This document shows positions 831 to 63,591 of a stretch of 64,000 nucleotides of DNA, in pieces. The notes under the pieces are model-generated. The model ran no database searches, was not told the origin of the DNA, and saw only the letters and a list, made by a program, of their open reading frames with translations. The DNA is taken from the NCBI RefSeq assembly GCF_028641065.1, contig NC_073382.1, forward strand, positions 86,118,001-86,182,000. The letters run 5' to 3'. Numbering within the stretch: position 1 is the first letter of the stretch; each line of letters begins with the position of its first letter. A program made the position numbers and the translations under genes. Source of the DNA: Leucoraja erinacea (taxonomy: Eukaryota).

Positions 831-1145
831 GTCCGGTGCCCGTTCGTCTGGTGAATGGGAACAACATGTGCTCCGGGAGAGTGGAGGTCTATCATAACTC
901 CACCTGGGGCAATGTCTGTGGCAGGAGCTGGGATATCAATGCGGGGAACGTGGTCTGCAAGGTGTTGAACTGTGGGACGGCCTGGTCAGTAACAAAAGCT
1001 GTCTCCTACGGAGAGGCTACTGGGAACATCTGGCTGGATGGGGTGAAGTGTAACGGTACAGAGCCTGCCCTTGACCAGTGTGCTGCCAGCCCATGGGGGG
1101 TGAATAACTGCACACACAGAGAGTTCGCTGGAGTCTCCTGCTCAG
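831..1145 (+). CDS. SRCR group B exon 1
   Basis: acceptor ttgcag ends at 830, donor gtgagt at 1146; 315 nt, open, 8 Cys (ORF 836-1153). Confidence 0.9.
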
Positions 1146-1150
1146 GTGAG

Positions 1151-2612
1151 TGAATGAATGAATAAATTAATGTTTATTGGCCAAGTATGTACACATACAA
1201 GGAATTTGTCTTGGTGCTCCGCTCGCAAGTAACATATTGACATACAGTCACAAAACCATTAAGAATAAAACATAAAACATTAAAACATTAAGAGTATGTC
1301 ACTAGAGTTTAAACATGTGAATTAAATAAAATACCTGAGCAAAAGGAGGCTACAGATGTTTGGTTATTGAGTAGAGCTACTACTCATGGGGAAAAAAGCT
1401 GTTTTTATGTCTGGCTGTGGCGGCTTTGACGGTCCGGAGTCGCCTTCCAGATGGAAGTGATTCAAAGAGTTTGTGGCCAGGGTGAGAGGGGTCAGACATG
1501 ATCTTACCCGCTCCCTTCCTGGCCCTTGCAGTGTACAGTTTGTCAATGGAAGGAAGGTTTGTTGCAGACTCTGGATGTCGTGCTGGGCGGCTGAGCCAAA
1601 CCAGACAATGATGGAGAAGGTGAGGACGGACGCTACGATGGCCGTATAGAATTGGCCATCATTGCCTGTGGCAGATTGTGTTTCCTCAGCTGCTGCAGGA
1701 AGTACATCCTCTGTTGCGCCTTTTTGACTGTGGAGTCAATGGTGGCCCCCCATTTAAGGTGCTTGGAGATGATGGGTCCAAGGAACTTAAAGGACTCCAC
1801 AGTTGTAACTGTGGTGTTGTTGATGGTGAATGGGGGGAGGGGGGGGGGGAGCTCTTCTAAAGTCTACTATCAATTCCACTGTCTTAAGAGCATTGTGCGC
1901 AAGGTGGTTACGAAGGCATCAGGTTGCCAGCTGCGTTACTTCCAGTCTGTAGGCAAATTCCTCCCCATCCTGGATCAGTGCAATCAGGATTGTGTCAACT
2001 GCAAACTTGAGAAGCTTGACAGAGGAGTCAGTGTATGTGCAGTCATTGGTGTAGATATAGAAGAGGAGAGGGGAGAGTACGCAGCCTTGCGGTGTTCCTA
2101 TACTGAGTGTCTGCGGGTCCGAGATGCGCTTTCCCAGCCTCACATGCTGTTTCCTGCCTATCAGGAAGCTGGTGATCCACTGACAGAGGGGTTCAGGCAC
2201 AGTCAACTGGGAGAGTTTGGAGTGTGGTAGCTCTGGTACAATGGTGGTGAATGCAGAGCTAAAATCCACAAACAAAATCCTCGCATAGGTTCCCTGGCGG
2301 ACTAGGTGCTGGAAGATGAAGTGCAGGCCGAGGTTGACTGCATCATCCACTGATCTATTGGCCCAGTATGCAAACTGCAGAGGGTCCAGCAGGGTTTTTG
2401 TTCAGCTTGACCAGCACGTCCTTCTATAGGTTATTCATTACTACAGAGGTCCGTGCGACAGGCCTGTTGACATTAAGACCAGTAATCCTTGTCTTTTTGG
2501 GTACAGGGACAAGGGTGGAGACTTTTGAAGTTGGCAGAGACAGTACAGATTTGCAGAGACTGGATGAAAATGTCTGTGGAAATTGGTGACAGCTGTTGCA
2601 CAGTGCTCGAGG
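1151..2612 (-). mobile_element. Rex1/Babar-like LINE fragment (degenerate RT) with (TTCA)n tail
   Basis: minus ORF 1919-2350 with ILFVDFSSAF, GTPQGCVLSPLLF and KLLKFAVDT; ORF 2424-2666 with VPKK..RPVARTSVVM; tail tgaatgaatgaa abuts the exon 1 donor. Confidence 0.85.
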
Positions 2613-2761
2613 GTTGACTTGACTTGACTTGAGTTGCGATGGAAATGTTAAAATACAAGTCGGCACAGGTTTAAGACGAGAAAAGGGATGATTTAACGAA
2701 GATTTTCGGTGAGTTTTTACAACTTAAATCGAATTTTAACCTAATTTCCCCTCTGTTGCAG

Positions 2762-3076
2762 GTCCGGTGCCAGTCCGTCTGGTGAATGGGAACAACATGT
2801 GCTCCGGGAGAGTGGAGGTCTATCATAACTCCACCTGGAGCACCGTCTGCGGCAGGAGCTGGGATATAAATGCGGGGAATGTGGTCTGCAGGGTGTTGAA
2901 CTGTGGGACGGCCCGTCAGTAACAACAGCTGCTTTCCTACGGAGAGGCCACTGGGAACATCTGGCTAGATGGGGTGAAGTGTAACGGGACAGAGCCTGCC
3001 CTCGACCAGTGTCCTGCCAGCCCATGGGGGGTGAATAACTGCACACACGGAGAGTACGCTGGAGTCTCCTGCTCAG
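2762..3076 (+). pseudogene. SRCR exon 2, disrupted (compensating -1/+1 indels with in-frame TAA)
   Basis: splice sites intact and length still 315, but gcccgt (vs gcccggt) and gctttcc (vs gcttcc) give gcc cgt cag TAA at 2920-2922. Confidence 0.75.
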
Positions 3077-4287: not shown

Positions 4288-4602
4288 GACCGGTGCCCGT
4301 CCGTCTGGTGAATGGGAACAACATGTGCTCCGGGAGAGTGGAGGTCTATCATAACTCCACCTGGAGCACCGTCTGCGGCAGGAGCTGGGATATCAATGCA
4401 GGGAATGTGGTCTGCAGGGTGTTGAACTGTGGGACGGCCCGGTCAGTAACAACAGCTGCTTCCTACGGAGAGGCCACTGGGAACATCTGGCTAGATGGGG
4501 TGAAGTGTAACGGGACAGAGCCTGCCCTCGACCAGTGTCCTGCCAGCCCATGGGGGGTGAATAACTGCACACGCGGAGAGTACGCTGGAGTCTCCTGCTC
4601 AG
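4288..4602 (+). CDS. SRCR group B exon 3
   Basis: ttgcag/ga ccg gtg ... tca g/gtgagt; 315 nt, open (ORF 4293). Confidence 0.9.
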
Positions 4603-6326: not shown

Positions 6327-6474
6327 NNNNNNNNNNNNNNNNNNNNNNNNNNNNNNNNNNNNNNNNNNNNNNNNNNNNNNNNNNNNNNNNNNNNNNNNNN
6401 NNNNNNNNNNNNNNNNNNNNNNNNNNNNNNNNNNNNNNNNNNNNNNNNNNNNNNNNNNNNNNNNNNNNNNNNNN
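6327..6474. other. Assembly gap (N run)
   Basis: 148 N. Confidence 1.
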
Positions 6475-6732: not shown

Positions 6733-8389
6733 GTATATTGTAAATAGTTGCGGCCCCAGCCCCGAGCCTTGCGGCACTTCACTCGCCACTGCGTGCCATT
6801 CTAACAGGGACCCGTTTATTCCAACTCTTTGTTTCATGTCTGCCATCCAATTCTCTATCCATGTCAATACCCTACCCCAATACCATGTGCAATAATTTTG
6901 CCCACTAATCTCCTGTGTGGGATCTTATCAAAAACATTCTGAAAGTCCAGATACCCGATGTCCACTGGCTCGCCTTCATCCAGTTTACTTGTCACATCCA
7001 CAAAAAATTCCAGAAGATTAGTCAGTTCCTCTGTGTCCCTAGACCCTCTGTCCTCTAGTACATCCGGAAGATTGCTTGTGTCTTCCATAGAGATGACTGA
7101 GCCAAAGCACCTTTTCAACTTCTCTGCCATTTCCTTATTCCCCATAATAATTTCACCTGGTTCTGCCTTCAAGGGGCCCACATTTGTGTTTACTAATCTT
7201 TTTCTCTTAACATATCTAAAGAAGCTTTTACTATCCTTCTTTATATTCTTGGCCAGCTTACCTTCGTACCTCACCTTTTAACCTCGTATTGCCCTTTTTG
7301 TTACCCTCTGTTGTCCTTTGAGAGTTTCCCAATCCTCTGGCTTCCCGCTACTCTTTGCGATGTTTTAGTTTTATTCCATCCCTATCTTCCATTGTCAGCC
7401 ACGGTTGCCTCTTATTCCCTTTAGAATCTTTCTTCCTCTTTGGAATGAAATGATCCTGCATCTTCTGGATTATGCCTAGAAATTCCTGCCAATTCTGTTC
7501 CAACGTCATTCCTGCCGGTCGACCGTCGTCAGCTCCTCTCTCATGGCTCCATAGCCTCTTTGTTCAACTGCAATACTGACACTTATGATTTAATCTTCTC
7601 CCTCTCAAATTGCAGATTAAAATGTATCATATTATGGTCACTACCTCCTAGCGGTTACTTTATCTTGAGTTCCCTTATTAAATCCGGTTCATTAGACAAC
7701 ATTAAATCCAGAATTGCCTTCTCTCTGGTCGGCTGCAGTATAAGCTGTTCTAATAAGAATCCATCTCGGAGGCGCTCTACACACTCCCTTTCTTGGGGTT
7801 CAGCACATACCTGATTTACCCAGTCTACCTGCACATTGAAAACTTCCATAACCACAGTGGCATTACCTTTGTTGCATGCCAATTTTAACTCATGTTGCAA
7901 CTTGCACCCTATATCCAGGCTACTGTTTGGGGGCCTGTAGATATCTCCCATTTGTCTCTTCTTACCTTTACAATTCCTCAATTCTATCCACAGTGACTTT
8001 ACATTGTCAGTCCCTATGTCACCACTCGCAAGGGACTGAAATTCATCCGTCACCAACAGAACTACCCCACCTCTGCCCATCTGCCAGTCCTTTCTATAGG
8101 ACATACAACCCTGAATATTCAGTTCCCAGTCCCGATCCTCCTGCAGCCATGTTTCTGTAATCCACACAATGTCATATCAACTAATCTCTAACTAACTTTC
8201 TTATACGTTGTGCATTCATATATAATACTTTTTTATCCATTATACACCTTGCCTTTCACATCGATTCCTATTTCTCTTGGCCATACTCTCCTATCCCTTT
8301 GTGAGCTTCCTGTCCATTTAATCCTGGTGTCTTTCTCAACTATTCCTCTACTCTTTATTCCGTTAACTCCAGCCTTATTTTTCCAATTT
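6733..8389 (-). mobile_element. Degenerate CR1 LINE ORF2 (APE endonuclease plus RT, internally deleted)
   Basis: ORF 7655-8167 ITETWL..RKD..GG..SLWIELRN..IYRPPNS..ILDL; ORF 6864-7274 KSFFRYVKRK..TNLLEFF..YLDFQNVFD; boundaries approximate. Confidence 0.85.
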
Positions 8390-8910
8390 GTCTCCTACGG
8401 AGAGGCCACTGGGAATCTTTCCCTTTCATAATTCATGGTGGAAAGTCCATACTTCATTGAAAGTGACACAGAAGTAGATAGGATGTCATTGTAAGCATAC
8501 GGTGTGATTGCCTCAATGGGTCAGGGTAATGAATATGAATGATGGGACGTCATTGGCAGTTGTATAAAACTTTGGTGAGATGACATTTGGAGAATTGTCT
8601 GTAGTTTGTCCCATTACAGGATAGATTCATAGTTATATATATGGTTAACAAAAGTTTCAAGATGTTGACTTGAATAGAGAATATTAGCTATTAGGATATT
8701 GTGGGGAAATTCAGAGTGTTTTCTCCAGATCACCGGAGGCTGAGGTGTTACCAGATAGAAGTGAATGACGTTTCCTCGACCATTATCTGTCCCACTCACC
8801 TCTCACTGCCAGCATCGTCATATTACACAGTCGAAACTGTCACTTTGTTAATTCTCAGCACCATTTGAGAAGTTATGTCTAATTTCATCCTCATCCCCCC
8901 TTTGTTGCAG

Positions 8911-9225
8911 GGCCGGTGCCTGTCCGTCTGGTGAATGGGAACAACATGTGCTCCGGGAGAGTGGAGGTCTATCATAACTCCACCTGGGGCATCGTCTGCG
9001 GCAGGAGCTGGGATATCAATGCGGGGAACGTGGTCTGCAGGGTGTTGAACTGTGGGCCGGCCCGGTCAGTAACAACAGCTGTGTCCTACGGAGAGGCCAC
9101 TGGGAACATCTGGCTGGATGGGGTGAAGTGTAATGGGACAGAGCCTGCCCTCGACCAGTGTCCTGCCAGCCCATGGGGTGTGAATCACTGCACACGCGGA
9201 GAGTACGCTGTAGTCTCCTGCTCAG
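8911..9225 (+). CDS. SRCR group B exon 4
   Basis: ttgcag / gtgagt, 315 nt, open (ORF 8916). Confidence 0.9.
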
Positions 9226-15900: not shown

Positions 15901-16215
15901 ATCTGCTGCCCGTCCGTCTGGTGAATGGGAACAACATGTGCTCCGGGAGAGTGGAGGTCTATCATAACTCCACCTGGGGCACCGTCTGCAACAGGAGCTG
16001 GGATATCAATGCGGGGAATGTGATCTGCAGGGTGTTGAACTGTGGGACGGCCCGGTCAGTACCAACAGCTGTCTCCTACGGAGAGGCCACTGGGAACATC
16101 TGGCTGGATGAAGTGACGTGTAACGGGACAGAGCCTGCCCTTGACCAGTGTCCTGCCAGCCCATGGGGGGTGAATAACTGCACACACGGAGAGTACGCTG
16201 AAGTCTACTGCTCAG
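15901..16215 (+). CDS. SRCR group B exon 5
   Basis: ttgcag/at ctg ctg ccc gtc (variant start DLLPVRL) ... tca g/gtgagt; 315 nt, open. Confidence 0.88.
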
Positions 16216-16960: not shown

Positions 16961-17275
16961 GTCCGGTGCCCGTCCGTCTGGTGAATGGGAACAACATGTG
17001 CTCCGGGAGAGTGGAGGTCTATCATAACTCTACCTGGGGCACCGTCTGCGGCAGGAGCTGGGATATCAATGCGGGGAACGTGGTCTGCAGGGTGTTGAAC
17101 TGTGGGCCAGCCCGGTTAGTAACAACTGCTGTATCTAACGGAGAGGCCACTGGGAACATCTGGCTGGATGGGGTGAAGTGTAACGGGACAGAGCCTGCCC
17201 TCGACCAGTGTCCTGCCAGCCCATGGAGGGTGAATAATTGCACACACGGAGAGTACGCTGAAGTCTCCTGCTCAG
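16961..17275 (+). CDS. SRCR group B exon 6
   Basis: ttgcag / gtgagt, 315 nt, open. Confidence 0.9.
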
Positions 17276-18101
17276 GTGAGTGTGGGTGGGGCTGGTCCCT
17301 CCTTGAGGAGTGGGTTTCATTGCTCCGGTCAGGAATTTTACATTGAAACCGAAAGTGATGTTATCCATAAATAAAGACAACATAAAAATGAAGTTGTGGG
17401 CAGTGAGGGAGGTTGTGAACGGATGCAGTGGGATATACATTGGGAAAGTGGGCCAAGGACCGGCAGATGGAGTTTAATTGTGACAAGTGCAAACTGATGC
17501 ATTATGGGAAGTTGGGTATTAGAGCAGAGAAATGGCAGATGGAGCTTAAATGTACAAGAACGAAGGGATGCATTGCAAAAGACCAAATGCACTCAGGAAG
17601 TACACAGTTAATGGCAGGACCCTCAGGGGATTAATGTACAGGGATAGTGTAGGATAACCAGAGCTTGTTGAGGATGTTGCCTCCAAAGAAGAGTATTTGT
17701 TAACTGGAGATTGTGGATGAAGGTGGAGTGTTTTCTCTGAAGCACAGATGCTGATGGGTGACTAGGTGGAAGAATATGACATTTCCTCAACTAATATCCC
17801 ACCCTGACTAATACACTCCCCTCTCACTCCTGGCACCACATCATATTACACAGTCTCACCCTCCCCTTTCACCAGTCTCAGAAACATTTGTTGACTTGAT
17901 TCTGAATCTAACCTCATTCCCTATCTGGCCCAGGTAAGACAGGGAAGGTTTAAAGGAGATTTACGAGGTACTCAGATCTTTATTCCAGGGATGGATTTGT
18001 CCAATACCAGAGGGCACAGTTTTAAGGTGAGAAGGAGAAGGTTTAAAGAAGAGTTTTGAGAACTTGACTCTAATTTCAAGCTCATTCTCCCTCTGTTGCA
18101 G

Positions 18102-18416
18102 GTCCGGTGCCCGTCCGTCTGGTGAATGGGAACAACATGTGCTCCGGGAGAGTGGAGGTCTATCATAACTCCACCTGGGGCACCCTCTGCAGCAGGAGCT
18201 TTGATATCAATGCGGGAAACGTGGTCTGCAGGGTGTTAAACTGTGGGACGGCCCGGTTAGTAACAACTGGTGCATTCTACGGAGAGTCTACTGGGAACAT
18301 CGGGCTGAATGGGTTGAAGTGTAACGGTTCAGAGCCTGCCCTCGACCAGTGTTATGCCAGCCCATGGGGGGTGAATAACTGCAACCACAGTGAGGAGGCT
18401 GGAGTCTCCTGTTCAG
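18102..18416 (+). CDS. SRCR group B exon 7 (divergent subtype; IWL changed to IGL)
   Basis: ttgcag / gtgagt, 315 nt, open (ORF 18107); SRSFD, GAFYGEST, NHSEEAGV. Confidence 0.88.
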
Positions 18417-19233
18417 GTGAGTGAAAGTGGTGAGGCAAGGTTGCAAACCTTCTACTGAACTTTAGTTGTATATTTGTGCTCTCATCCCTCCATTCTTGTC
18501 ATCTTGATTTACAGCTTGGTTCACTGTCTTGCTGTGACTATAGAACTCCAGAATGCAGGGGATTACATTTGTCTATTTCATGTGCGCCTCTAATGAAATA
18601 TAGGCATGTTTATGGATTCAGATCAGTGAATGAAGAAGAACACTTTTTCCTCGCTGACTCTAAAACTAAAGCTAAAACTACATTGGGAAAGTGGGCCAAG
18701 GACCGGCAGATAGAGTTTAATTGTGACAAGTGCAAACTGATGCATTATGGGAAGTTAAAGCAGAGAACAATTTACAGAGTAAATTGCAGGGCCCTGGGAA
18801 AGTTTGTAGACAGAGAGACCTAGGGCTACAAGTACTAGATTCCTTGAAAGTAGCAACACATACAGACAGGGTGGCGAAGAAAGCATTTGGCACAATTGCC
18901 TTCATCATTCAGGGCTTTGACTAGAAAAGGTGGGAGGTTTTGAATGTAGCTCTAAAAGGCTTTAGTTTGACCACTTTTGTAGTATTCTGTTATATCCAGG
19001 ATCGCTCCATTACAGGAAGGACGTGGAAGCTTTGGAGAGGGAGCAGAAGTTCACCAAGAGGGTTTTAGATAGGCAGATGGATATGGAGGGAATAAGAATA
19101 TGGACCATGTGCAGGCAGAGGAGAATAGCTTATATTGACATCACGTTTGTGCACAGGCATTGTGGGCCGATGGACCTGTTCCGATGTACGTCATGTATTG
19201 TGTGTAGTCTGGTAGTTCGAAGGGTGCATGAAA

Positions 19234-42301: not shown

Positions 42302-42616
42302 GTCCGGTGCCCGTCCGTCTGGTGAATGGGAACAACATGTGCTCCGGGAGAGTGGAGGTCTATCATAACTCCACCTGGGTCACAGCCTGCGACAGGAGCT
42401 GGGATATCAATGCGGGGAACGTGGTCTGCAGGGTGTTGAACTGTGGGACGGCCCGGTTAGTATCAACAGCTGCCTCCTACGGAGTGGTCACTGGGAACAT
42501 CTGGCTGGATGGGGTGAAGTGTAACGGGAAAGAGCCTGCCCTCGACCAGTGTCCTGCCAGCCCATGGAGGGTGAATAACTGCACACACGGAGAGTACGCT
42601 GAAGTCTCCTGCTCAG
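42302..42616 (+). CDS. SRCR group B exon 17
   Basis: ttgcag / gtgagt, 315 nt, open (ORF 42307). Confidence 0.9.
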
Positions 42617-44365
42617 GTGAGTGTGGGTGAGAATGGTCCCTCCTTGAGGAGTGGGATTCATTGCACGGGTAAGGAATTTTACATTGAAACTGAAAGTGAT
42701 GTTATCCATAAATAAAGACAACATGAAAATGAGATGAATTTGTGGGCAGTGATGGAGGTTGTGAATGGATGCAGCGGGATACAGATTAGTTGGGTATTAG
42801 AGCAGAGAAATGGCAGATGGAGCTTAAATGTACAAGGATGCAGTGATGCATTGCAAGAGAACAAATGCACACGGGAAGTACACAGTAAATGGCAGGATCC
42901 TCAGGAGCATTGATGTACAGGGATAGCATAGGTTAACAAGAGCTTGTTGAGGATGACATTCATCCACAATTGCCATGTAACAACTACCCTTCATTGGAAG
43001 AGTATTTGTTACATAGAAATTGTGGATGAATGTGGAGTGTTTTCTCTGAAGCGTTGATGCTGCTGGGTGACTAGGTGAAAGAATATGAAAATTCCTCAAC
43101 TATAAATTTCCCACTCTGTCTAACCCACTCCCCTCTCACGCCTGGCACCACGTCATATTACAGAGACTCACATCCCCTTTCACCAGTCTCAGAAGCTTTT
43201 GTTGACTTGATTCTGAATCTAACCTCATTCCATATCTGGCCCAGGTAAGATTCAGGAGGATTTTTACAGGAGTGAAGGGTTTGAGTTTTAGGGAGTCACT
43301 GGATAAAATAAGAGATGGCAAATAGGTGGTTAGAGCAGGGAAACTGGCCCTTCAGCCCACCGACTCCGCACTGATCATCACCCATTCACTCATACTAATC
43401 TCAGATCACTCTTCACACATTCCCGTCAACTCCCCAGACTCCCACCTTTATTGACACGCTCGGGGAATTAACGTCAGACGATTAACTCAATCAGCTGAGA
43501 TATGAGAGAGAATTGGAGCTCCGGGGGGAAATTCACGCTGATCAGAGGGAGTGGAAAGTCCGGATAAGCTAGAGCGAAGGGACCAGGGTCTGAAAGAGGT
43601 TCATAAAATCACAAGGGGCACAAATAACGTGGACATCACAACATATGTGTGGGAAGAAAGTGCAGATGTTGATTTAAACCGAAGATGGACACAAAAAGCT
43701 TGTGTAACTCAGCGGATCAGACAGTCTCTCCAGAGAACAGGAATAGGCTTCGGTTCGTGACCCGTCTTCAGACTGAAAAAGGGCCTCGACCTTAAAAATC
43801 ACCTATTCCTTCTCACCAGAGATGCTGTCTGCCTGCTGAGTTACTCCAGCTTTTTGTGTTGATCACAATATATGCCCCAGGGCATGAGAGTGGGACGACA
43901 TAGAGGGCACAGGTTGAAGGTGAAAGGGAAAAGATTTAATAGGAACCTGAGACGTAACACACAGAGGCTAGTGGGTGCATGGACAGAGCTGCCAGAGGAA
44001 GTGATTGATGCAGGAGCAGCAAAAGCAACATTTAAAAGACATCTGGACAGATAAATGAATATGAAAGCTTTGAAGGGATACGGTCAGAATGCAGGAAAAG
44101 GATCTGGCATTGAGGGAGCATCTTGGTCGGGTTGGTTGACTTGAGCTGAAGGGCCTTCTCCTGTGCAGTGTGACACAGTCTGTTCAGGTGGGAGTCGAGG
44201 TTTGTGGAAGAGTCAGGTTTTGTAGGGTGGTCTTGCTCTCGAGTGGCTGTGCAGCATCCTCCTGTCACCGGCGCTGTGATGAGCGGAGAGCGACCTGCTG
44301 GCTACCCTGCTGAAAATCACATGCAATCCTGCTGCAGATTTAACATCATCCCCCCTCTGTTGCAG

Positions 44366-44680
44366 GTCCGGTGCCCGTCCGTCTGGTGAATGGGAACAAC
44401 ATGTGCTCCGGGAGAGTGGAGGTCTACCATAACTCCACCTGGAGCACCGTCTGCGGCAGGAGCTGGGATATCAATGCGGGGAACGTGGTCTGCAGGGTGT
44501 TGAACTGTGGGCCGGCCCGGTTAGTATCAGCAGCTTCCCCCTATGGTGAGGCCACTGGGAACATCTGGCTGGATGAGGTGACGTGTAACGGGACAGAGCC
44601 TGCCCTCGACCAGTGTCCTGCCAACCCATGGAGGGTGAATAACTGCACACACGGAGAGTATGCTGAAGTCTCCTGCTCAG
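44366..44680 (+). CDS. SRCR group B exon 18
   Basis: ttgcag / gtgagt, 315 nt, open (ORF 44371). Confidence 0.9.
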
Positions 44681-46346
44681 GTGAGTGTGGGTGGGAATGA
44701 TGTTATCCATAAATAAAGACAACATGAAAATGAGATGATGTTGTGGGCAGTGAGGGAGGTTGTGAATGGATGCAGCGGGATATAGATTAGTTGGGTATTA
44801 GAGCAGAGAAATGGCAGATGGAGCTTAATTGTACAACAACGAAGTGATGCATTGCAAGAGACCAAATACACTCGGGAAGTACACAGTAAATGGCAGGACC
44901 CTCAGGGGCAGTGATGTACAGGGATAGTGTAGGTTATCAAGCGCTTGTTGAGGATGTTTCCTCCAATGAAGAGTATTTGTTACATAGAAATTGTGGATGA
45001 ATGTGGAGTTTTTTCTCTGAAGCGTTGATGCTGTTGGGTGACTAGGTGGAAGAATATGAAATCTCCTCAACTATTAATTTCCCACTGTCTAATCCACTCC
45101 CCTCTCACGCCTGGCACCACGTCATATTACAGAGACTCACCTCCGCTTTCACCAGTCTCAGAAGCTTTTGTTGACTTGATTCTGAATCTAACCTCATTCC
45201 ATATCTGGCCCAGGTATGATTCCGAAGGATTTTACCAGGAGTGAAGGGTTTGAGTTATAGGTAGTCACTGGATAAAATAAGAGATGTTAATAGATAGCAA
45301 ACAGGAGGATAGAGCAGGGACACTGACCCTTCAGCCCACAGACTCCATACTGATCATCACCCATTCACTCATTCTAATCTCAGATCACTCTCCACACATT
45401 CCCGTCAACTCCCCAGACTCCCACGCTTATTGATGCACTCGGCCAATTACCGGCAGACGATTAACTCAATCAGCTGAAATATGAGAGATAATTGGAGCAT
45501 CCGGGGGGGAATTCATGCAGATCAGAGGGAGTGGAAAGACCAGATAAGCTGGAGCGAAGAGACCAGGGTCTGAAAGAGGTTCATAAAATCACAAGGGGCA
45601 CAGATAATGTGGACATCGCAACATATGTGTGGGAAGGAACTGCAGATGTTGATTTAAACCGAAGATGGACACAAACAGCTTGTGTAACTCAGCGGATCAG
45701 ACAGCTTCTCTAGAGAACAGGAATAGGCTTTGGTTTGTGACCCGTCTTCAGACTTAAAAAGTGTCTTGACCTTAAAAGTCACCTATCCGTTCTCACCTGA
45801 GATGCTGTCGGCACGCTGAGTTACTCTAGCTTTTTGTGTCAGTCACAATATATGTCCCTGGGCATGAGAGTGGGACGACATAGAGGGCACAGGTTGAAGG
45901 TGAAAGGGTAAAGATTTAATAGGATCCCGAGAGGTAACACACAGAGGGTAGTGGGTGAATGGACAGAGCTGCCAGAGGAAGTGATTGATGCAGGTACAAT
46001 AAAAGCAACATTTAAAAGACATCTGGACAGATAAATGAATGGGAAAGCTTTGCCGGGATATGGAAGAATGCTGGAAAGGGAACTGGTGTAGAGGGAGCAT
46101 CTTGGACGGGTTGGGTGACGTGAGATGAAGGGCCTTCTCCTGGGCAATGTGACACAGAGTCTGTTGGGGTGGGAGTCGAGGTTTGTGGATGAATCAAGTT
46201 TTGTAGGGTGGTCTTGCTCTCGAGTGGCTGTGCAGCATCCTCCTGTCACCTGCGCTGTGAGGAGCGGAGAGCGACCTGCTGGCTACCCTGCTGGAATTCA
46301 CATGCAATCCTGCAGCAGATTTAACCTCATCCCCCCTCTGTTGCAG

Positions 46347-46661
46347 GTCCGGTGCCCGTCCGTCTGGTGAATGGGAACAACATGTGCTCCGGGAGAGTGG
46401 AGGTCTATCATAACTCCACCTGGAGCACCGTCTGCGGCACGAGCTGGGATATCAATGCAGGGAACGTGGTCTGCAGGGTGTTGAACTGTGGGACGGCCCG
46501 GTTAGTAACAGCAGCTGTCTCTAACGGAGAGGCCACAGGGAACATCTGGCTGAATGAAGTGAGTTGTAACGGGACAGAGCCTGCCCTCGACCAGTGTCCT
46601 GCCAGCCCATGGAATGTGAATAACTGCACACACGGAGAGTACAGTGAAGTCTCTTGCTCAG
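46347..46661 (+). CDS. SRCR group B exon 19
   Basis: ttgcag / gtgagt, 315 nt, open (ORF 46352). Confidence 0.9.
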
Positions 46662-48396
46662 GTGAGTGTGGGTGAGGATGGTCCCTCCTTGAAGAGTGTG
46701 TTTTCCATTGCTCGGGTCAGGAATTTTACTTTGAAACCGAAAGCGATGTTATCCATAAATAAAGACAAAATGAAAATGAGGTGAAGTTGTGGGCAGTGAG
46801 GGAGGTTGTGATTGGATGCAGCGGGATATATATTCGTTGGGTATTAGAGCAGAGAAATGGCAGATGGAGCTTAATTGTACAAGAACGAAGTGATGCATTG
46901 CAAGAGACCAAATGCACCCGGAAAGCACACTGTAAATGGCAGGATCCTCAAGAGCAGTGATGTACAGGGATAGCGTATGTTAACAAGAGCTTGTTGAGGA
47001 TGTTGCCTCCAATGAAGAGTATTTGTTACATGGAAATTGTGGATGAATGTGGAGTGTTTTCGCTGAAGCGTTGATGCTGTTGGGTGACTAGGTGGAAGAA
47101 TATGAAATCTCCTCAACTATTAATTTCCAACTGTCTAATCCACTCCCCTCTCACGCCTGGCACCACGTCATATTACAGAGACTCACCTCCCCTTTCACCA
47201 GTCTCAGAAGCTTTTGTTGACTTGATTCTGAATCTAACCTCATTCCATATCTGGCCCAGGTAAGATTCAGGAGGATTTTGCCAAGATTGAAGGGTTTGAG
47301 TTATAGGGAGTCCCTGGATAAAATAAGAGAAGTTAATAGAAGGTAAACAGGAGAATAGAGCAGGGAAACTGGCCGTTCAGCCCACAGACTCCGCACTGAT
47401 CATCACCCATTCACTCATACTAATCTTAGATCTCAGATCACTGTCCACAGATTCCCGTCAACTCCCCAGACTCCCACCCTTATTGACGCACTCGGGGAAT
47501 TAACGGCAGACGATTAAAACAATCAGCTGAGATATGAGAGAGAATTGGAGCATCGGGGGGAAATTCATGCAGACCAGAGGGAGTGGAAAGTCCGGATAAT
47601 CTGGAGCGAAGAGACCTGGGTCTGAAAGAGGTTCATAAATCACAAGGGGCCCAGATAACGTGGACATCACTAAATATGTGTGGGAAGGAACTGCAGATGT
47701 TGATTTAAACTGAAGAGGGACACAAAAAGCGTGTGCATCTCAGCGGATCAGGCAGTCTCTCCAGAGAACAGGAATAGGCTTCGGTTCGTGACCTGTCTTC
47801 AGACTGAAAAAGGGTCTTCACTTTAAAAATCACCGATTCCTTCTCACCAGAGATGCTGTCTGCCCGCTGAGTTACTCTAGCTTTTTGTATCGATCAGAAT
47901 ATATGCCCCAGGTCATGAGAGTGGGACGACATAGAGGGCACAGGTTGAATGGTGAAAGGGAAAAGATTTAATGGGAACCTAAGACGTAACACACAGAGGG
48001 TAGTGGTTGCATGGACAGCTGCCAGAGGAAGTTATTGATGCAGGTGCAACAAAAGCAACATTTAAAAGACATCTGGGCAGATAAACGAATGGGAAAGCTT
48101 TGCTGGGATATGGAAGAATGCAGGAAAGGGAACTGGTGTAGAGGGAGCATCTTGGTCGGGTTGGGTGACTTGAGCTGAAAGGCCTTCTCCTGTACAGTGT
48201 GACACAGAGTCTGTTGGGGTCGGAGTCGAGGTTTGTGGAAGAGTCTGGTTTTGTAGGGTTGTCTTGCATTCGAGTGGCTGTGCAGCATCCTCCAGTCACC
48301 TGCGCTGTGAGGAGCGGAGAGCGACCTGCTGGCTACCCTGCTGAAAATCACATGAAATCCTGCTGCAGATTTAACCTCATCCCCCCTCTGTTGCAG

Positions 48397-48711
48397 GTCC
48401 GGTGCCCGTCCGTCTGGTGAATGGGAACAACATGTGCTCCGGGAGAGTGGAGGTCTATCATAACTCCACCTGGAGCACCGTCTGCGGCACGAGCTGGGAT
48501 ATCAATGCAGGGAACGTGGTCTGCAGGGTGTTGAACTGTGGGACGGCCCGGTTAATAACAGCAGCTGTCTCTAACGGAGAGGCCACTGGGAACATCTGGC
48601 TGAATGAAATGACTTGTAACGGGACAGAGCCTGCCCTCGACCAGTGTCCTGCCAGCCCATGGAGGGCGAATAACTGCACACACGGAGAGTACGCTGAAGT
48701 CTCCTGCTCAG
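48397..48711 (+). CDS. SRCR group B exon 20
   Basis: ttgcag / gtgagt, 315 nt, open (ORF 48402). Confidence 0.9.
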
Positions 48712-51464
48712 GTGAGTGTGGGTGAGGATGGTCCCTCCTTGAGGAGTGGGTTTCATTGCTCGGGTCAGGAATTTGAAACCGAAAGGGATGTTATCCATAA
48801 ATAAAGATAACATGAAAATGAGATGAAGTTGTGGGCAGTGAGGGAGGTTGTGATTGGATGCAGCGGGATATAGATTAGTTGGGTATTAGAGCAGAGAAAT
48901 GGCAGATGGAGCTTAATTGTACAACAACGAAGTGATGCATTGCAAGAGACCAAATGCACCCGGAAAGCACACTGTAAATGGCAGGATCCACAAGAGCAGT
49001 GATGTACAGGGATAGCGTATGTTAACAAGAGCTTGTTGAGGATGTTGCCTCCAATGAAGAGTATTTGTTACATGGAAATTGTGGATGAATGTGGAGTGTT
49101 TTCTCTGAAGCGTTGATGCTGTTGGGTGACTAGGTGGAAGAATATGAAATCTCTTCAACTATTAATTTCCCACTGTCTAATCCACTCCCCTCTCACGCCT
49201 GGCACCACGTCATATTCCAGAGACCCTCCTCCCCTTTCACCAGTCTCAGAAGCTTTTGTTGACTTGATTCTGAATCTAACCTCATTCCATATCTGGCCCA
49301 GGTAAGATTCAGGAGGATTTTGCCAAGATTGAAGGGTTTGAGTTATAGGGAGTCCCTGGATAAAATAAGAGAAGTTAATAGATGGCAAATAGGAGGATAG
49401 AGCAGGGAAACTGGCCGTTCAGCCCACAGACTCCGCACTGATCTTCACCCATTCACTCATACTAATCTTAGATCTCAGATCACTGTCCACAGATTCCCGT
49501 CAACTCCCCAGACTCCCACCCTTATTGACGCACTCGGGGAATTAACGGCAGACGATTAACTCAATCAGCTGAGATATGAGAGAGAATTGGAACATCCGGG
49601 GGGAAATTCATGCAGACCAGAGGGAGTGGAAAGTCCGGATAATCTGGAGCGAAGAGACCAGGGTCTGAAAGAGGTTCATAAATCACAAGGGGCCCAGATA
49701 ACGTAGGAATCACTAAATATGTGTGGGAAGGAACTGCAGATGTTGATTTAAACTGAAGAGGGACACAAAAAGCTTGTGCAACTCAGTGGTTCAGGCAGTC
49801 TCTCCAGAGAACAGGAATAGGCTTCGGTTCGTGATCCGTCTTCAGACTGAAAAATGGTCTTGCCTTTAAAAATCACCAATTCCTTCTCTGGATGCAGCGG
49901 GATATAGATTAGTTGGGTATTAGAGCATAGAAATGGCAGATGGAGCTTAAATGTACAAGAACGAAGTGATGCATTGCAAGAGACCAAATGCTCCTGGGAA
50001 GTACACAGTAAATGGCAGGACTCTCAGGGGCATTGATGTACAGGGATAGTGTAGGTTAACAAGAGCTTGTTGAGGTTGTTGCCTCCAATGAAGAGTATTT
50101 GTTACAAGGAGATTGTGGATGAATGTGGAGTGATTTCTCTGAAGCTTTGATTCTGTTGGGTGACTAGGTGGAAGAATATGAAATTTCCTCCACTAATAAT
50201 TTTCCACTCTAATCCACTCCCTTCTCACTCCCGGCACCACGTCATATTACAGACTCACCTCTCCTTTCACCAGTCTCAGAAGCTTTTGTTGACTTGATTC
50301 TGAATCTAACCTCGTTCCATATCTGGCCCAGGTAAGATTCCGGAGGATTTTAACAGGAGTGAAGGGTTTGAGTTATAGGGAGACACTGGATAAAGTAAGA
50401 TAAGTTAATAGATGGCAAACAGGATAGAGCAGGGAAACTGGAAACTTCAGACCACAGACTCCGCACTGATCATCACCCATTCACTGATACCAATCTCAGA
50501 CACTCTCCACACATTCCCGTCAACTCCCCAGACTCCCACCCTTATTGACACACTCGTGGAATTAACGCCAGACGATTAACTCAATCAGCTGAGATATGAG
50601 AGAGAATTGGAGCTTCCGGGGGGAAATTCATGCAGATCAAATGGAGTGGAAAGTCCGGTTTAGCTGGAGCGAAGGGACCAGGGTCTGAAAGAGGTTCATA
50701 AAATCACAAGGGGCACAAATAACGTGGACATCACAACATATGTGTGGGAAGGAACTGCAGATGTTGATTTAAACCGAAGATGGACACAAAATGCTTGTGT
50801 AAATCAGCGGATCAGACAGCCTCTCTAGAGAACAGGAATAGGCTTCGGTTCGTGACCCGTCTTCAGACGGAAAAAGGGTCTCGACTTTAAAAATCACCTA
50901 TTCCTTCTCACCAGAGATGCTGTCTGCCCGCTGAGTTACTCTAGCTTTTTTTGTCGATCACAATATATGTCCCAGGGCATGAGAGTGGGACGACATAGAG
51001 GGCACAGGTTGAAGGTGAATGGCAAAAGATTTAATAGGAACCTGAGCCATAACACACAGAGGGTAGTGGGTGCATGGATAGACCTGCCAGAGGAAGTGGT
51101 TGAGACAGCTGCAACGAAAGCAACATTTAAAAGACATCTGCACACTTAAATGAATAGTAAAGCTTTGCAGGGAATATGGACAGAATGGAGGAAAAGGAAC
51201 TGGTGTAGAGGGAGCATCTTGGTCGGGTTGGGTGACTTGAGCTGAAGGGCCTTCTCCTGTGCAGTGTGACACAGAGTCTGTTGGGGGTGGGAGTCGAGGT
51301 TTGTGGAAGAGTCAGGTTTTGTCGGGTGGTCTTGCTCTCGAGTGGCTGTGCAGCATCCTCCAGTCACCTGCGCTGTGAGTAGCGGAGAGCGACCTGCTGG
51401 CTACCCTGCTGAAAATCACATGCAATCTTGCAGCAGATTTAACCTCATCCCCCCTCTGTTGCAG

Positions 51465-51779
51465 GTCCGGTGCCCGTCCGTCTGGTGAATGGGAACAACA
51501 TGTGCTCCGGGAGAGTGGAGGTCTATCAGAACTCCACCTGGAGCACTGTCTGCGGCACGAGCTGGGATATCAATGCGGGGAACGTGGTCTGCAGGGTGTT
51601 GAACTGTGGGACTGCCCGGTTAGTAACAACTGCTGTCTCTAACGGAGAGGCCACTGGAAACATCTGGCTAAATGAAGTGACGTGTAATGGGACAGAGCCT
51701 GCCCTCGACCAGTGTCCTGCCAGACGATGGCAGGTGAATAACTGCACACACGGAGAGTACGCTGAAGTCTCCTGCTCAG
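51465..51779 (+). CDS. SRCR group B exon 21
   Basis: ttgcag / gtgagt, 315 nt, open (ORF 51470). Confidence 0.9.
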
Positions 51780-52140
51780 GTGAGTGTGGGTGGTGATGGT
51801 CCCTCCTTGAGGAGTGGGTTTCATTGCTCGGGTCAGGAATTTTTCATTGAAACTGAAAGTGATGTTATCCATAAATAAAGACAACATGAAAATGAGATGA
51901 AGTTGTGGGCAGTGAGGGAGGTTGTGAATGAATGCAGCGGGATATAGATTAGTTGGGTATTAGAGCAGAGAAATGGCAAATCAAGCTTAAATGTACAAGG
52001 ACGAAGTGATGCATTGCAAGAGACCAAATGCACCCGGGAAGTACACAGTAAATGGCAGGACCCTCAGGAGCATTGATGTACAGGGATAGTGTATGTTAAC
52101 AAGAGCTTGTTGAGGATGTTGCCTCCAATGAAGAGTATTT

Positions 52141-55453: not shown

Positions 55454-55768
55454 GTCCGGTGCCCGTCCGTCTGGTGAATGGGAACAACATGTGCTCCGGG
55501 AGAGTGGAGGTCTATCATAACTCCACCTGGGGCACCGTCTGCGGCAGGAGCTGGGATATTAATGCGGGGAACGTGGTCTGCAGGGTGTTGAACTGTGGGA
55601 CGGCCCGGTCAGTAACAACAGCTGCCTCCTATGGAGAAGCCACTGGGAACATCTGGCTGGATGGGGTGAAGTGTAAAGGGACAGAGCCTGCCCTCGACCA
55701 GTGTTATGCCAGCCCATGGGGTGTGATTAACTGCACACACGGAGAGTACGCTGTAGTCTCTTGCTCAG
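55454..55768 (+). CDS. SRCR group B exon 22
   Basis: ttgcag / gtgagt, 315 nt, open. Confidence 0.9.
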
Positions 55769-61923: not shown

Positions 61924-62026
61924 TGGAGCGTGGAAAGTCGGGATAAGCTGAAGCGAAGGGACCAAGGTCTGAAAGAGGTTCATAAAATCACAAGGGGCAC
62001 AGATAACATGGACATCACAACATATA

Positions 62027-62556
62027 ATAATAATAATAAATTTTATGTTTGGGCGCCGTTCAAATCTCAAGGACAACGTACAAAGATTAACAGAAGAGAA
62101 AAAAACATATTGTCGGAGAAAAATAAATAATAAGGACATCATCAATACACAAATCTATATTACTAAAAGTCTGTTCTTGACCGGTGTTGGCCATCTGTGC
62201 TGCGAGTACTCAAATGTAAGCGTCCTTAGTGTTTCTAAAACACTTGCAGAATGTGTCACGATAGCGCTCCAGCGCTGTGCCGCCACCGAAGCCGAGGTGC
62301 TGGGCGGTCCCCACCAGGAAACGGCGCTCCACGCCCACTGGTAGGCCATGAGGACGGGTCGACGGGCAGCCCGGATATAAAGCTACCTCACCGACCAGGT
62401 AGGGACCTAGAAGTAAGATTACCTCCTTCCCCCCACATTCAGAAGTCCATTTCTCCAACAAACGAAGAAAAAGACTTACGAAAAACTGGGGGAAAAAAAA
62501 GAATTAAACGGACGGCTGCTGGTTAGCAGCAGTTCCCCAAGATGGCTCCTCCTCCT
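62027..62556 (-). mobile_element. Short retroposed element with (TTA)n tail and catata TSD, containing a Helitron-like 5' end
   Basis: catata at 62021-62026 and 62557-62562; (aat)n at the left end; A|TCTATATTACTAAAAG on + at 62154. Confidence 0.55.
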
Positions 62557-63276
62557 CATATATGTGTGGGAAGGAACTGCAGATGTTGATGCAACCTGAA
62601 GATGGACACAAAAAGCTTGTGTAACTCAGCGGATCAGACAGTCCCTCTAGAGAACAGGAATAGGCTTCGGTTCGTGACCCGTCTTCAGACGGAAAAAGGG
62701 TCTCAACCTTAAAAATCACCTGTTCCTTCTCACCAGAGATGCTGTCTGCCCGCTGAGTTACTCTGGCTTTTTGTGTCGATCAGAATATATGTCCCAGGGC
62801 ATGAGAGTGGGACGACATAGAGGGCACAGGTTGAAGGTGAAAGGGAAAAGATTTAATAGGAACCTGAGAGGTAACACACAGAGGGTAGTGGGTGCATGGA
62901 CAGAGCTGCCAAAGGAAGTGGTTGAGGCAGGTGCAACAAAAGCAAAATTTAATAAACATCTGGACAGATAAATGAATAGTAAAGCTTTGCAGAGATATGG
63001 ACAGAATGATGTCTGGTGTAGAGGGAGCATCTTGGTCGGGTTGGATGACTTGAGCTGAAGGGCCTTCTCCTGTGCAGTGTGACACAGAGTCTGTTGGGGT
63101 GGGAGCCGAGGTTTGAGGAAGAATCAGGTTTTGTAGGGTTGTCTTGCTTTCGAGTGGCTGTGCAGCATCCTCCTGTCACCTGCGCTGTGAGGAGCGGAGA
63201 GCGACCTGCTGGCTACCCTGCTGAAAATCACATGAAATCCTGCAGCAGATTTAACCTCATCCCCCCTCTGTTGCAG

Positions 63277-63591
63277 GTCCGGTGCCCGTCCGTCTGGTGA
63301 ATGGGAACAACATGTGCTCCGGGAGAGTGGAGGTCTATCAGAACTCCACCTGGGGCACCGTCTGTGGCACGAGCTGGGATATCAATGCAGGGAACGTGGT
63401 CTGCAGGGTGTTGAACTGTGGGATGGCCCGGTCAGTAACAACTGCTGTCTCTAACGGAGAGGCCACTGGGAACATCTGGCTGGATGGCATGAATTGTAAT
63501 GGGACAGAGCCTGCCCTCGATCAGTGTCCTGCCAAACGATGGCAGGTGAATAACTGCACACACGGAGAGTACGCTGAAGTCTCCTGCTCAG
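63277..63591 (+). CDS. SRCR group B exon 23
   Basis: ttgcag / gtgagt, 315 nt, open (ORF 63282). Confidence 0.9.

What the first reader, a model, noticed from the sequence alone, without database searches (positions are those of the whole stretch)
831..63591. Array of 23+ interchangeable, frame-preserving SRCR cassettes: candidate combinatorial or copy-number-variable innate receptor locus
Seen: every exon is exactly 315 nt, phase 1-1, with near-identical acceptor and donor contexts, and no two open exons encode the same protein. Any subset can be skipped, duplicated or deleted without frameshift. Known: group B SRCR domains are single-exon modules; mammalian DMBT1, CD163L1 and WC1 carry roughly 11-14 domains, and DMBT1 shows SRCR copy-number variation. 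Here there are at least 23 (2415 aa if all are joined) and the array is open at both ends. Inference: either a giant secreted agglutinin or a cassette pool diversified by alternative splicing and unequal crossover.
Basis: partly seen in the sequence, partly recalled or inferred. Interest (0 to 1): 0.8.

Follow-up and report, generated by a model that had tools for sequence, protein, structure and literature searches.

The report
Giant tandem SRCR-domain exon array
A stretch of shark- or ray-like DNA carries 23 near-identical exons, each encoding one SRCR (innate-immune type) protein domain. It is a lineage-specific expansion of a known kind of gene, and neither its expression nor any exon shuffling is shown.

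Summary
The window has 23 SRCR exons, all on the + strand. Each is exactly 315 nt, runs from TGTTGCAG| to |GTGAGT, is phase 1-1 and keeps 8 cysteines. All 23 differ from one another. Twenty-two are open; exon 2 has a TAA between two compensating 1-nt indels.

Nothing else that looks like coding sequence lies in the window apart from transposon remains. The array grew by tandem duplication at about 1.07 kb, 2.05 kb and 8.6 kb.

At least 144 substitutions caused no stop and no cysteine loss, so the fold is under selection. Exon positions 21-61 are invariant. Variation falls partly on the canonical ligand-binding positions. All domains lack the Asp-Asp pair that DMBT1 needs for calcium-dependent binding.

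The nearest relatives are unpublished stingray gene models (79% identity, 16 domains). Each species' domains group together, so the arrays expanded or were homogenised separately.

Predicted proteins with 20-40 SRCR domains already exist, so the size is not unique.

One bulk RNA run gave only trace reads and no splice joints. Expression, alternative splicing, copy-number variation and continuity across the N gap remain untested.

Best reading: the interior of one very large multi-SRCR gene. It is a new member of a known kind.

The parts
831..1145 (+). SRCR exon 1, open, 8 Cys
2762..3076 (+). SRCR exon 2: 315 nt with intact splice sites, but an in-frame TAA between a 1-nt deletion and a 1-nt insertion (pseudo-exon, unless it is an assembly error)
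   Evidence: not contradicted by DNA contigs
4288..4602 (+). SRCR exon 3, open
6327..6474 (.). Assembly gap (148 N) inside intron 3. Left flank: 30-nt minisatellite and a C run. Right flank: unique DNA, then a minus-strand LINE piece
8911..9225 (+). SRCR exon 4, open
15901..16215 (+). SRCR exon 5, open; the only exon starting with AT (junction codon Asp)
16961..17275 (+). SRCR exon 6, open
18102..18416 (+). SRCR exon 7, open; divergent type, 99.4% identical to exon 11
23473..23787 (+). SRCR exon 8, open; young copy pair with exon 12
24552..24866 (+). SRCR exon 9, open; young copy pair with exon 13
25644..25958 (+). SRCR exon 10, open
26718..27032 (+). SRCR exon 11, open
34316..34630 (+). SRCR exon 12, open
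35400..35714 (+). SRCR exon 13, open; the exon closest to all the others, used as search query
37002..37316 (+). SRCR exon 14, open
39105..39419 (+). SRCR exon 15, open
40244..40558 (+). SRCR exon 16, open
42302..42616 (+). SRCR exon 17, open
44366..44680 (+). SRCR exon 18, open
46347..46661 (+). SRCR exon 19, open
48397..48711 (+). SRCR exon 20, open
51465..51779 (+). SRCR exon 21, open
55454..55768 (+). SRCR exon 22, open
63277..63591 (+). SRCR exon 23, open
17510..35724 (+). Two copies of a multi-exon block: 17510-24876 and 26125-35724, 97-98% identical. Exons 7, 8, 9 correspond to 11, 12, 13. A LINE is shared by both copies, and the second copy has an extra 2.2-kb insertion at 30772-33013
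37928..52140 (+). Sub-array of exon-plus-intron units with a period of about 2.05 kb, 88-94% identical
8389..8415 (+). Orphan 27-nt fragment identical to the inside of exons 5, 13 and 15; a relic of a broken unit in the intron that holds the gap

Best explanation
The whole window lies inside one lineage-specific, tandemly amplified array of group-B SRCR exons in an elasmobranch gene, by relatives closer to a stingray than to a catshark. Each 315-nt phase 1-1 exon encodes one complete 8-cysteine SRCR domain. Spliced in order, the exons would give at least 22 domains joined head to tail by a short ..SCSG-PVPVRL.. link, with no spacer exons. That is a very large, heavily N-glycosylated extracellular protein that binds targets multivalently.

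Shown here: the exon anatomy; growth by unequal crossover at periods of about 1.07, 2.05 and 8.6 kb; long-term selection for an open frame and all cysteines; a frozen 5' quarter of each exon; variation partly on the canonical ligand face; absence of the canonical Asp-Asp calcium site; and species-wise grouping of domains.

Inferred, not shown: that it is a single gene, that it is transcribed, that all exons are included, that the product is secreted, and that it serves immune recognition. If exon 2 is truly broken and the gene works, that exon must be skipped or the allele is null.
For: 23 of 23 exons have identical length, phase and splice motifs. Pfam SRCR E 2.6e-30 to 2.6e-28 over the full model. 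PDB: 30 sequences matched, best single domain CD163 domain 7 at 108.6 bits.

After masking the exons, 171 related proteins hit nothing in the window but one retroelement piece, so no gene-end or other exon type is visible.

Duplication blocks.

At least 144 substitution events among the 22 open exons produced no stop (P=0.003 if unconstrained) and no Cys loss (P=3.7e-5). No exon changed length, whereas the flanking-intron alignments carry many gap columns.

Stingray models XP_072894896.1 and XP_072894897.1 (79% identity; 4 and 16 domains) join such domains directly as SC[ST]G-PVPVRL. Catshark, bowfin and other relatives are SRCR-only with 13-20 domains.

Sequons at N22 in 22 of 22 domains, N74 in 19 of 22 and N92 in 19 of 22.
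Against: Expression is not shown. In about 5% of bulk RNA run X24 (12.9 M reads) only trace depth fell on exons: 1.26 and 0.83 on exon 1, 0.6 on exon 2 and 2.17 on exon 3. The mate strand was inconsistent and no exon-exon joint was listed. Single-cell run X22 gave zero depth on exons, and no indexed RNA run holds the locus.

Exon 2 carries a stop.

Large sense-strand retroelements sit in introns 4, 7 and 11.

In the four youngest copy pairs, exons differ more than their upstream introns (38/1260 against 24/1592, p=0.0066), and the differences lie mostly in non-synonymous codons (30 against 7). This could mean relaxed constraint.

The gene's ends lie outside the window, so 'one gene' and 'secreted' are unproven. 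The gap in intron 3 is unbridged.
Confidence: 0.55

Rival explanations
1. Cassette pool: one gene whose frame-neutral SRCR exons are variably skipped, and vary in copy number between individuals, so that cells or individuals make different domain sets.
For: Any-to-any joining keeps the frame and the linker codon. Every domain is different, and differences fall on ligand-face positions 30, 31, 69, 70. A working gene would have to skip exon 2. The invariant acceptor and the invariant exon positions 21-61, including 0 of 13 third codon positions, suggest uniform splicing signals. The array has recent block duplications. Human DMBT1 alleles range over 7-20 SRCR domains with a 0.7-2.7% per generation mutation rate at CNV1 (passages of PMC4851238).
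Against: No read evidence of any joint, whether skipping or consecutive. Uniformly strong splice sites (23 of 23 TGTTGCAG and GTGAGT) more often go with constitutive inclusion; this is an inference. Exon ends are too alike for short reads to tell partners apart. No population data.
Confidence: 0.12
2. A cluster of several shorter multi-SRCR genes lying head to tail, with small leader and tail exons hidden in the long introns (after exons 4, 7, 11, 22).
For: Exons 7, 11 and 22 share a distinct downstream intron type and are followed by 5-7.5 kb introns. The stingray annotation splits its array into separate models of 431 and 1696 aa on one scaffold. SRCR genes occur in tandem clusters in other animals (passages of PMC10855680).
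Against: No match in the masked window to any non-SRCR part of 171 relatives, including the C-terminal tail shared by the catshark protein P0153 and by P0152. The long introns are largely LINE and LTR-element sequence. The stingray models start mid-domain and end in what looks like intron read-through, so they appear to be fragments. Leader exons are too short to detect by similarity, so this is not excluded.
Confidence: 0.15
3. A silent or decaying array: exons recently released from selection, kept alike only by recent duplication.
For: Trace RNA only. Stop in exon 2. Singleton changes at otherwise invariant residues in exon 12 (R5H, P78R). Young pairs show non-synonymous change at least as fast as intron change. 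In the 2-kb units the variable part of the exon is no better conserved than the intron. Sense-strand retroelements lie in introns.
Against: 22 of 23 exons are open, 184 of 184 cysteine codons are kept and no length change occurred over at least 144 substitutions. Overall dN/dS is 0.50, with 13 of 231 pairs at dN>dS. Only one RNA sample of unknown tissue was read, at 5% of the run.
Confidence: 0.13
4. Assembly artefact: copies over-expanded, or haplotypes placed in tandem.
For: The two 8.6-kb blocks are 97-98% alike, within the range of haplotype divergence. There is a gap at 6327-6474.
Against: Most copies differ by 3-14% and every exon is unique. The two blocks differ by a 2.2-kb insertion and are not next to the gap. 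Contigs of DNA-type runs under two organism labels cover 27 of 30 bins of 531-4830, almost all at 99% or more (1852 of 1871 and 2366 of 2382 laid), though one of these runs may be the assembly's own sample.
Confidence: 0.03

Closest known systems
Predicted stingray proteins XP_072894896.1 ('CD5 antigen-like', 431 aa) and XP_072894897.1 ('M130-like', 1696 aa), Hemitrygon akajei
   Same: Highest identity (79% over 4 stretches). Same domain start [33 protein letters not shown]. Same direct domain-to-domain link. Same Gly-Arg in place of the Asp-Asp pair.
   Different: Domains of each species sit on their own side of a branch (95/81 and 100/96). Twelve positions share no residue between the two sets. 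Mean identity is 74.9% between species, against 86.7% and 93.1% within. The models are automatic, truncated at both ends and described in no paper that I could find.
DMBT1 / SALSA / gp340 (mammals)
   Same: Tandem single-exon group-B SRCR domains amplified as exon-plus-intron units, with block and single-unit repeats. 50% identity, ungapped, to cheetah DMBT1 domains. GRVEV....W core motif.
   Different: No SID spacer exons. No CUB or ZP exon in the window. Site-2 and site-3 residues D1019/D1020 are Gly and Arg/Lys/Thr here, and D1026 is Ala. D1019A or D1020A abolishes DMBT1 binding (passages of PMC7043408). At least 23 exons, against 13 canonical and 7-20 allelic (PMC4851238).
CD163 / CD163L1 / WC1 family
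   Same: Best solved-structure match is CD163 domain 7 (108.6 bits). Domains abut with short links, one exon each.
   Different: That family has 9-12 domains (recalled), an interdomain exon, and transmembrane and cytoplasmic exons (passages of PMC2906472). None is seen in the window, and the gene ends are outside it. CD163 uses calcium-bound acidic clusters for ligand binding and for trimer assembly (passages of PMC12273918), and the Asp-Asp pair that aligns with them in CD163 domains 2 and 7 is absent here.
Large SRCR-only predicted proteins of other animals (catshark 16, bowfin 20, limpet 26, oyster 40 stretches) and sea-urchin SRCR genes
   Same: SRCR-only architecture, many domains, domain-level tandem duplication, single-exon domains in a sea-urchin cluster.
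   Different: 33-63% identity. Independent expansions. Those with 23 or more domains are invertebrate or unnamed.

Membership tests
SRCR superfamily, group B domain | Match to the SRCR domain model over its full length | tested here: met
   PF00530 E 2.6e-30, 2.6e-28, 8.4e-29, model positions 1-100 of 100, for 3 of 23 exons scanned. All 23 align ungapped to one another.
SRCR superfamily, group B domain | Eight cysteines per domain (group A has six; definition recalled) | tested here: met
   8 Cys in 23 of 23 exon translations.
SRCR superfamily, group B domain | Whole domain on one exon (definition recalled) | tested here: met
   By sequence only: AG...GT bounds around each full domain in 23 of 23. 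No RNA joint was seen.
DMBT1 | SID spacer segments between SRCR domains | tested here: not met
   No conserved block inside the 2-kb unit introns. Stingray models join domains directly. Cheetah DMBT1 domains start alternately 127 and 108 aa apart, against a period of 105 here.
DMBT1 | C-terminal CUB-SRCR-CUB-ZP module | tested here: inconclusive
   Nothing of that kind in the window, and the relatives scanned have SRCR only. The gene's 3' end is outside the window.
DMBT1 | Dual cation site (D1019, D1020, E1086; D1020, D1058, D1059, N1081) | tested here: not met
   Among the 22 open exons, position 30 is G17/S2/D2/N1 and position 31 is R15/T5/K2. Position 69 is D14/N6/E2, position 70 is G15/E7, N92 is kept in 21 of 22 and E97 in 22 of 22 (residue list from passages of PMC7043408).
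DMBT1 | Copy-number variation of SRCR units between individuals | not tested
   One read-laying run only, used on 531-4830. Contig depth there is not a copy number.
CD163 / WC1 family | Transmembrane and cytoplasmic exons, interdomain exon | tested here: inconclusive
   None found in the window. Short exons could escape detection, and the gene ends lie outside.
CD163 / WC1 family | Characteristic order of domain types (a-b-c-d-e pattern) | not tested
   No domain-type tree with mammalian members was built.
CD5L / AIM (name given to the nearest stingray model) | Three SRCR domains, small secreted protein (recalled) | tested here: not met
   At least 23 domain exons here. The 431-aa stingray model is a truncated four-domain piece.

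The most novel reading that the evidence does not exclude
A ray-lineage recognition system in which a very long SRCR array has given up the ancient calcium-and-acidic-cluster binding mode (Asp-Asp replaced by Gly-Arg in every domain, a sequon on the site-3 Asn). It diversifies the same face domain by domain, while the first 61 nt of each exon and its acceptor are kept identical so that units can be skipped, duplicated or exchanged freely. Splicing and copy number together would then give individual- or cell-specific domain sets.
Probability: 0.1. Interest if true: 0.75.

Novelty: new member of a known kind. Interest (0 to 1): 0.35.

Why it matters
Multi-SRCR proteins such as DMBT1, CD163 and WC1 are central innate receptors, and their domain number matters for binding. 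Cartilaginous fish are the oldest jawed vertebrates with adaptive immunity, yet their SRCR repertoire is undescribed in the papers I could search.

This locus shows that a ray-like lineage built an array of at least 23 domains on its own. The array has a uniform scaffold, differences at the usual ligand site, and no canonical calcium site. That makes a simple question testable: do such domains bind without calcium, and what do they bind?

The practical lesson is that automatic gene models of such arrays are fragments and carry misleading names ('CD5 antigen-like', 'M130-like', 'DMBT1-like').

Tried and rejected
Gap test in silico. I looked for one element spanning 6327-6474. The LINE piece on the right (6733-7829, minus strand) is not continued on the left, where a 30-nt minisatellite and a C run abut the N. 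Continuity could therefore not be shown.

Hidden spacer exons. The conservation profile of five 2-kb units shows no block better kept than its surroundings, apart from the exon's first 60 nt.

Other exon types. Running 171 relatives against the masked window found only a retroelement piece.

Recombination among exons. My own PHI-type test gave p=0.145, although 619 of 2415 site pairs are incompatible. It is inconclusive.

CpG decay as the cause of fast exon change. Only 6 of 38 differences are CpG transitions.

Rfam gave 0 matches at gathering score. Earlier findings of the scan gave nothing relevant.

Reads gave trace RNA only.

Papers. No description of elasmobranch SRCR arrays was found (search listings only).

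Not done: structure prediction, the protein atlas and the search for homologous proteins were not used, because Pfam and PDB already settle the fold.

Supplements were not requested. S2 Fig D of PMC12273918 (cation residues of CD163 domains) and the supplementary tables of PMC10855680 (domain counts) may bear on the calcium-site and size comparisons.
Full report
OBSERVATION. The window is 64,000 nt with 47.4% G+C and one run of 148 N at 6327-6474. A tblastn search with the translation of the first SRCR ORF found 23 matches. All are in + frames, ungapped over 105 aa, with E 1e-52 to 9e-68.

Reading the flanks gives each exon as start-5 to start+309. On that basis 23 of 23 exons are exactly 315 nt. 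All 23 are preceded by TGTTGCAG with an 81-88% pyrimidine tract, and all 23 are followed by GTGAGT. Every exon ends in G. Exons begin with GT (17), GA (3), GG (2) or AT (1). So the phase is 1-1, and whichever exon follows another, the junction codon is Gly, or Asp before exon 5.

All 23 nucleotide sequences and all 23 translations are different. Nucleotide identity is 85.7-99.4% (mean 91.6), and all 23 keep 8 cysteines. Introns are 745-7508 nt and exons make up 11.3% of the window.

Exon 2 (2762-3076) has an in-frame TAA. Compared with exon 3, it has lost one G and gained one T about 22 nt further on, both in short runs of the same letter. Its length stays 315, but the stretch between the two changes is shifted.

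THE GAP. The N run lies in the intron between exon 3 (ends 4602) and exon 4 (starts 8911), so it cannot change any exon's frame. I looked for a single element crossing it and found none.
- To the left lie a 30-nt minisatellite (6125-6268) and a run of C.
- To the right lie unique sequence and then a minus-strand LINE piece (6733-7829) that is not continued on the left.
- The first 310 nt of this intron match the introns after exons 2 and 4. The last 270 nt match the DNA upstream of other exons, so both flanks are ordinary array DNA in the same orientation.
- A 27-nt orphan piece identical to the inside of exons 5, 13 and 15 lies at 8389-8415, a relic of a broken unit.

Physical continuity, and whether the gap hides an exon, remain unknown. 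A wrong join there would still leave 3 and 20 exons on either side.

WHAT THE EXONS ENCODE. Three exons scanned (3, 7, 23) match Pfam SRCR over the whole model, with E 2.6e-30 to 2.6e-28. Against solved structures, exon 3 matched 30 distinct sequences. The best single domain is CD163 domain 7 (108.6 bits). SCARA5, MSR1 and DMBT1 domains score 92-104 bits, so domain similarity alone does not place the array in one named gene family. I searched exon by exon and built no joined protein.

NOTHING ELSE CODING. With the 23 exons masked, 171 related proteins found only a retroelement piece at 14020-14535. These proteins include the non-SRCR tail shared by the catshark protein P0153 and by P0152.

The long introns hold several retroelements:
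- a Ty3/gypsy-like element on the + strand, with RT, RNase H and integrase at 13198-15384 and a zinc-knuckle ORF at 11922-12920;
- LINE reverse transcriptases at 21087-21707 and 31598-32593 on the + strand, and at 1919-2350 on the - strand.

Rfam found nothing.

HOW THE ARRAY GREW. Self-comparison shows three scales of tandem duplication:
- units of about 1.06-1.14 kb (exons 5-7, 8-11, 12-13);
- a sub-array with a period of about 2.05 kb, 88-94% identical (37928-52140);
- a block at 17510-24876 repeated at 26125-35724 at 97-98% identity.

The large block carries exons 7, 8 and 9 (matching 11, 12 and 13) and a LINE that was therefore already in place. The second copy later gained a further 2.2 kb at 30772-33013.

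The nearest proteins among 1.84 billion representatives are cartilaginous-fish models. They include Hemitrygon akajei XP_072894896.1 (79% identity), with XP_072894897.1 (1696 aa) in the same cluster, plus catshark and chimaera proteins at 59-69%. The stingray models join domains directly as SC[ST]G-PVPVRL, but they start mid-domain and end in apparent intron read-through.

Domain identity averages 86.7% within the window and 93.1% within the stingray model, but 74.9% between them (maximum 83.7%). Twelve positions share no residue between the two sets. In a maximum-likelihood tree, the 22 window domains, 15 stingray domains and 9 catshark domains each sit on one side of a branch. Support is 95/81, 100/96 and 100/98, though the bootstrap had not fully settled. 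So the arrays were amplified or homogenised after the lineages split. By these relatives, the window's organism is closer to the stingray than to the catshark.

SELECTION. Among the 22 open exons, mean dN is 0.070 and mean dS 0.141, a ratio of 0.50. In 13 of 231 pairs dN exceeds dS. At least 144 substitution events are needed to explain the differences. With 3.95% of possible changes making a stop and 6.8% destroying a cysteine, an unconstrained sequence would escape stops with P=0.003 and cysteine loss with P=3.7e-5. The fold has therefore been under selection for most of the array's history.

The constraint is uneven.
- Exon positions 21-61 are identical in all 23 copies. There, 0 of 13 third codon positions vary, against 54 of 84 further on. 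The chance of such a run at the rate seen in the rest of the exon is 5e-12. That points to selection on the nucleotides themselves (splicing signals) or to local homogenisation.
- The remaining three quarters change about as fast as the introns in the 2-kb units.
- In the four youngest pairs (7/11, 8/12, 9/13, 6/10), exons differ at 38 of 1260 sites, against 24 of 1592 in the 400 nt upstream (Fisher p=0.0066). Seven differences lie in synonymous codons and 30 in non-synonymous codons, and only 6 of the 38 are CpG transitions.

This last pattern fits diversifying change, short gene conversions or relaxed constraint, and I could not separate them. My PHI-type test gave p=0.145 despite 619 of 2415 incompatible site pairs.

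THE LIGAND SITE. The DMBT1 SRCR8 structure paper names three sites: site 1 (D1023, D1026), site 2 (D1019, D1020, E1086) and site 3 (D1020, D1058, D1059, N1081). It reports that D1019A or D1020A abolishes binding to all ligands tested (passages of PMC7043408).

An ungapped alignment with cheetah DMBT1 domains and the CD163 alignments put these residues at positions 30, 31, 34, 37, 69, 70, 92 and 97 of the 104-aa domain. In the 22 open exons:
- position 30 is G17/S2/D2/N1;
- position 31 is R15/T5/K2;
- D34 is kept in all;
- position 37 is A21/E1;
- position 69 is D14/N6/E2;
- position 70 is G15/E7;
- N92 is kept in 21;
- E97 is kept in all.

No domain has the Asp-Asp pair, and most carry a basic residue there. 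The stingray domains share this (CGRSW), whereas the catshark-type relatives keep CDD/CDN.

Four of the positions that vary among copies are thus canonical ligand positions. N92 also starts a sequon (N-C-T) in 19 of 22 domains, alongside N22 in 22 of 22 and N74 in 19 of 22.

My inference is that these domains do not bind in the DMBT1/CD163 calcium-bridged way (CD163: passages of PMC12273918). Binding through the same face, remodelled, is plausible but untested.

HOW UNUSUAL IS THE SIZE. Of the best 150 representative proteins, three have 23 or more SRCR stretches: 40 (oyster), 27 (unnamed) and 26 (limpet). Others have 21, 20 (bowfin 'DMBT1, partial') and 19. Five relatives scanned are SRCR-only with 8-20 domains. 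Human DMBT1 has 13 SRCR domains with SID spacers, then CUB-SRCR-CUB-ZP, and alleles of 7-20 (passages of PMC4851238). So 23 or more in one vertebrate array is large but not of a new kind.

READS. The search with 34301-44300 found no run on record as RNA that holds the locus. The best holders, coded organisms A and B, carry about a third of the sampled words.

I laid 531-4830 (exons 1-3) at 98% likeness. In bulk oligo-dT RNA run X24, about 5% of the run (12.9 M reads) was read and 65 reads were laid, mostly on high-copy repeats. Depth on exon bins was 1.26 and 0.83 (exon 1, first mate on -), 0.6 (exon 2, +) and 2.17 (start of exon 3, +). Depth in the unique intron bins was zero. No exon-exon joint reached the listing threshold. 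Single-cell run X22 had zero depth on the exons.

DNA-type contigs X1 and X2 covered 27 of 30 bins, almost all at 99% or more, and listed no indel within exon 2. Coverage of the exact sites cannot be verified.

Expression, exon order in RNA and the fate of exon 2 are therefore open. Exon ends are also nearly indistinguishable: for many exons the first 75 nt are identical to another exon's. Short reads could hardly assign partners.

READING. The most likely account (0.55) is the interior of one very large, lineage-specific multi-SRCR gene whose exons are normally spliced in order. The rivals are several tandem genes (0.15), a decaying or silent array (0.13), a variably spliced or copy-variable cassette pool (0.12) and an assembly artefact (0.03).

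It works like DMBT1 or CD163L1 in architecture, as a multivalent string of SRCR domains built by unit duplication. It fails DMBT1's tests for spacers and for the cation site. Membership in the CD163/WC1 family cannot be tested without the gene's ends.

No paper in the searchable library describes such arrays in cartilaginous fish (search listings).

WHAT I SAW OF EACH PAPER. I saw passages only, through the find mode, of PMC7043408, PMC12273918, PMC2906472, PMC4851238 and PMC10855680. All other papers I saw only as search listings. The definitions of group A/B cysteine numbers, the domain counts of CD163, CD163L1, WC1 and CD5L, and the idea of alternative SRCR splicing in sea urchins are recalled, not checked here.

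Noticed in passing
window 8389-8415: A 27-nt fragment identical to the inside of SRCR exons 5, 13 and 15 (encodes VSYGEATGN) sits alone in intron 3, 496 nt upstream of exon 4. It looks like the relic of a destroyed unit.
   Followed up: partly
window 11922-15384 (+): A Ty3/gypsy-like retroelement in intron 4, in the sense orientation. It has a zinc-knuckle gag-like ORF, RT plus RNase H, and integrase, in three separate ORFs, so it is probably degenerate.
   Followed up: partly
window 30772-33013: A 2.2-kb insertion with an intact-looking LINE RT ORF (31598-32593). It is present only in the second copy of the 8.6-kb block, so it is younger than that duplication.
   Followed up: partly
window 531-684 and 1107-1538: High-copy repeats (contig word depth 1e4-2e5) that carry poly(A)-tailed reads in both RNA runs. 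Most RNA reads laid on the stretch belong to them, not to the SRCR exons.
   Followed up: no
window 4948-5162 and 9522-9664: Introns 3 and 4 share the same layout after the exon: about 310 nt of similar sequence, a G-rich run (56 G at 9523-9578) and 23-nt tandem repeats.
   Followed up: no
window 38605-38913, 45839-46249, 47968-48351, 50958-51272, 62780-63085, 11562-11945, 36453-36755 (all -): A family of similar minus-strand ORFs of about 100-136 aa recurs a few hundred nt upstream of many exons, as part of the repeated intron. They have no match among the SRCR relatives, and their nature is unknown (repeat or chance ORF).
   Followed up: no
window 24426-24974 (-) and similar: Long antisense ORFs (up to 182 aa) run across the SRCR exons. 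They are most likely a by-product of the G+C-rich, stop-poor exons (58% G+C, against 47% in the introns).
   Followed up: no
proteins P0058, P0151, P0079, P0152 (public models): Automatic models of related arrays start mid-domain, run into introns or include transposon-like N-termini. They carry conflicting names (CD5 antigen-like, M130-like, DMBT1-like, SSC5D), which shows how such arrays defeat annotation.
   Followed up: partly
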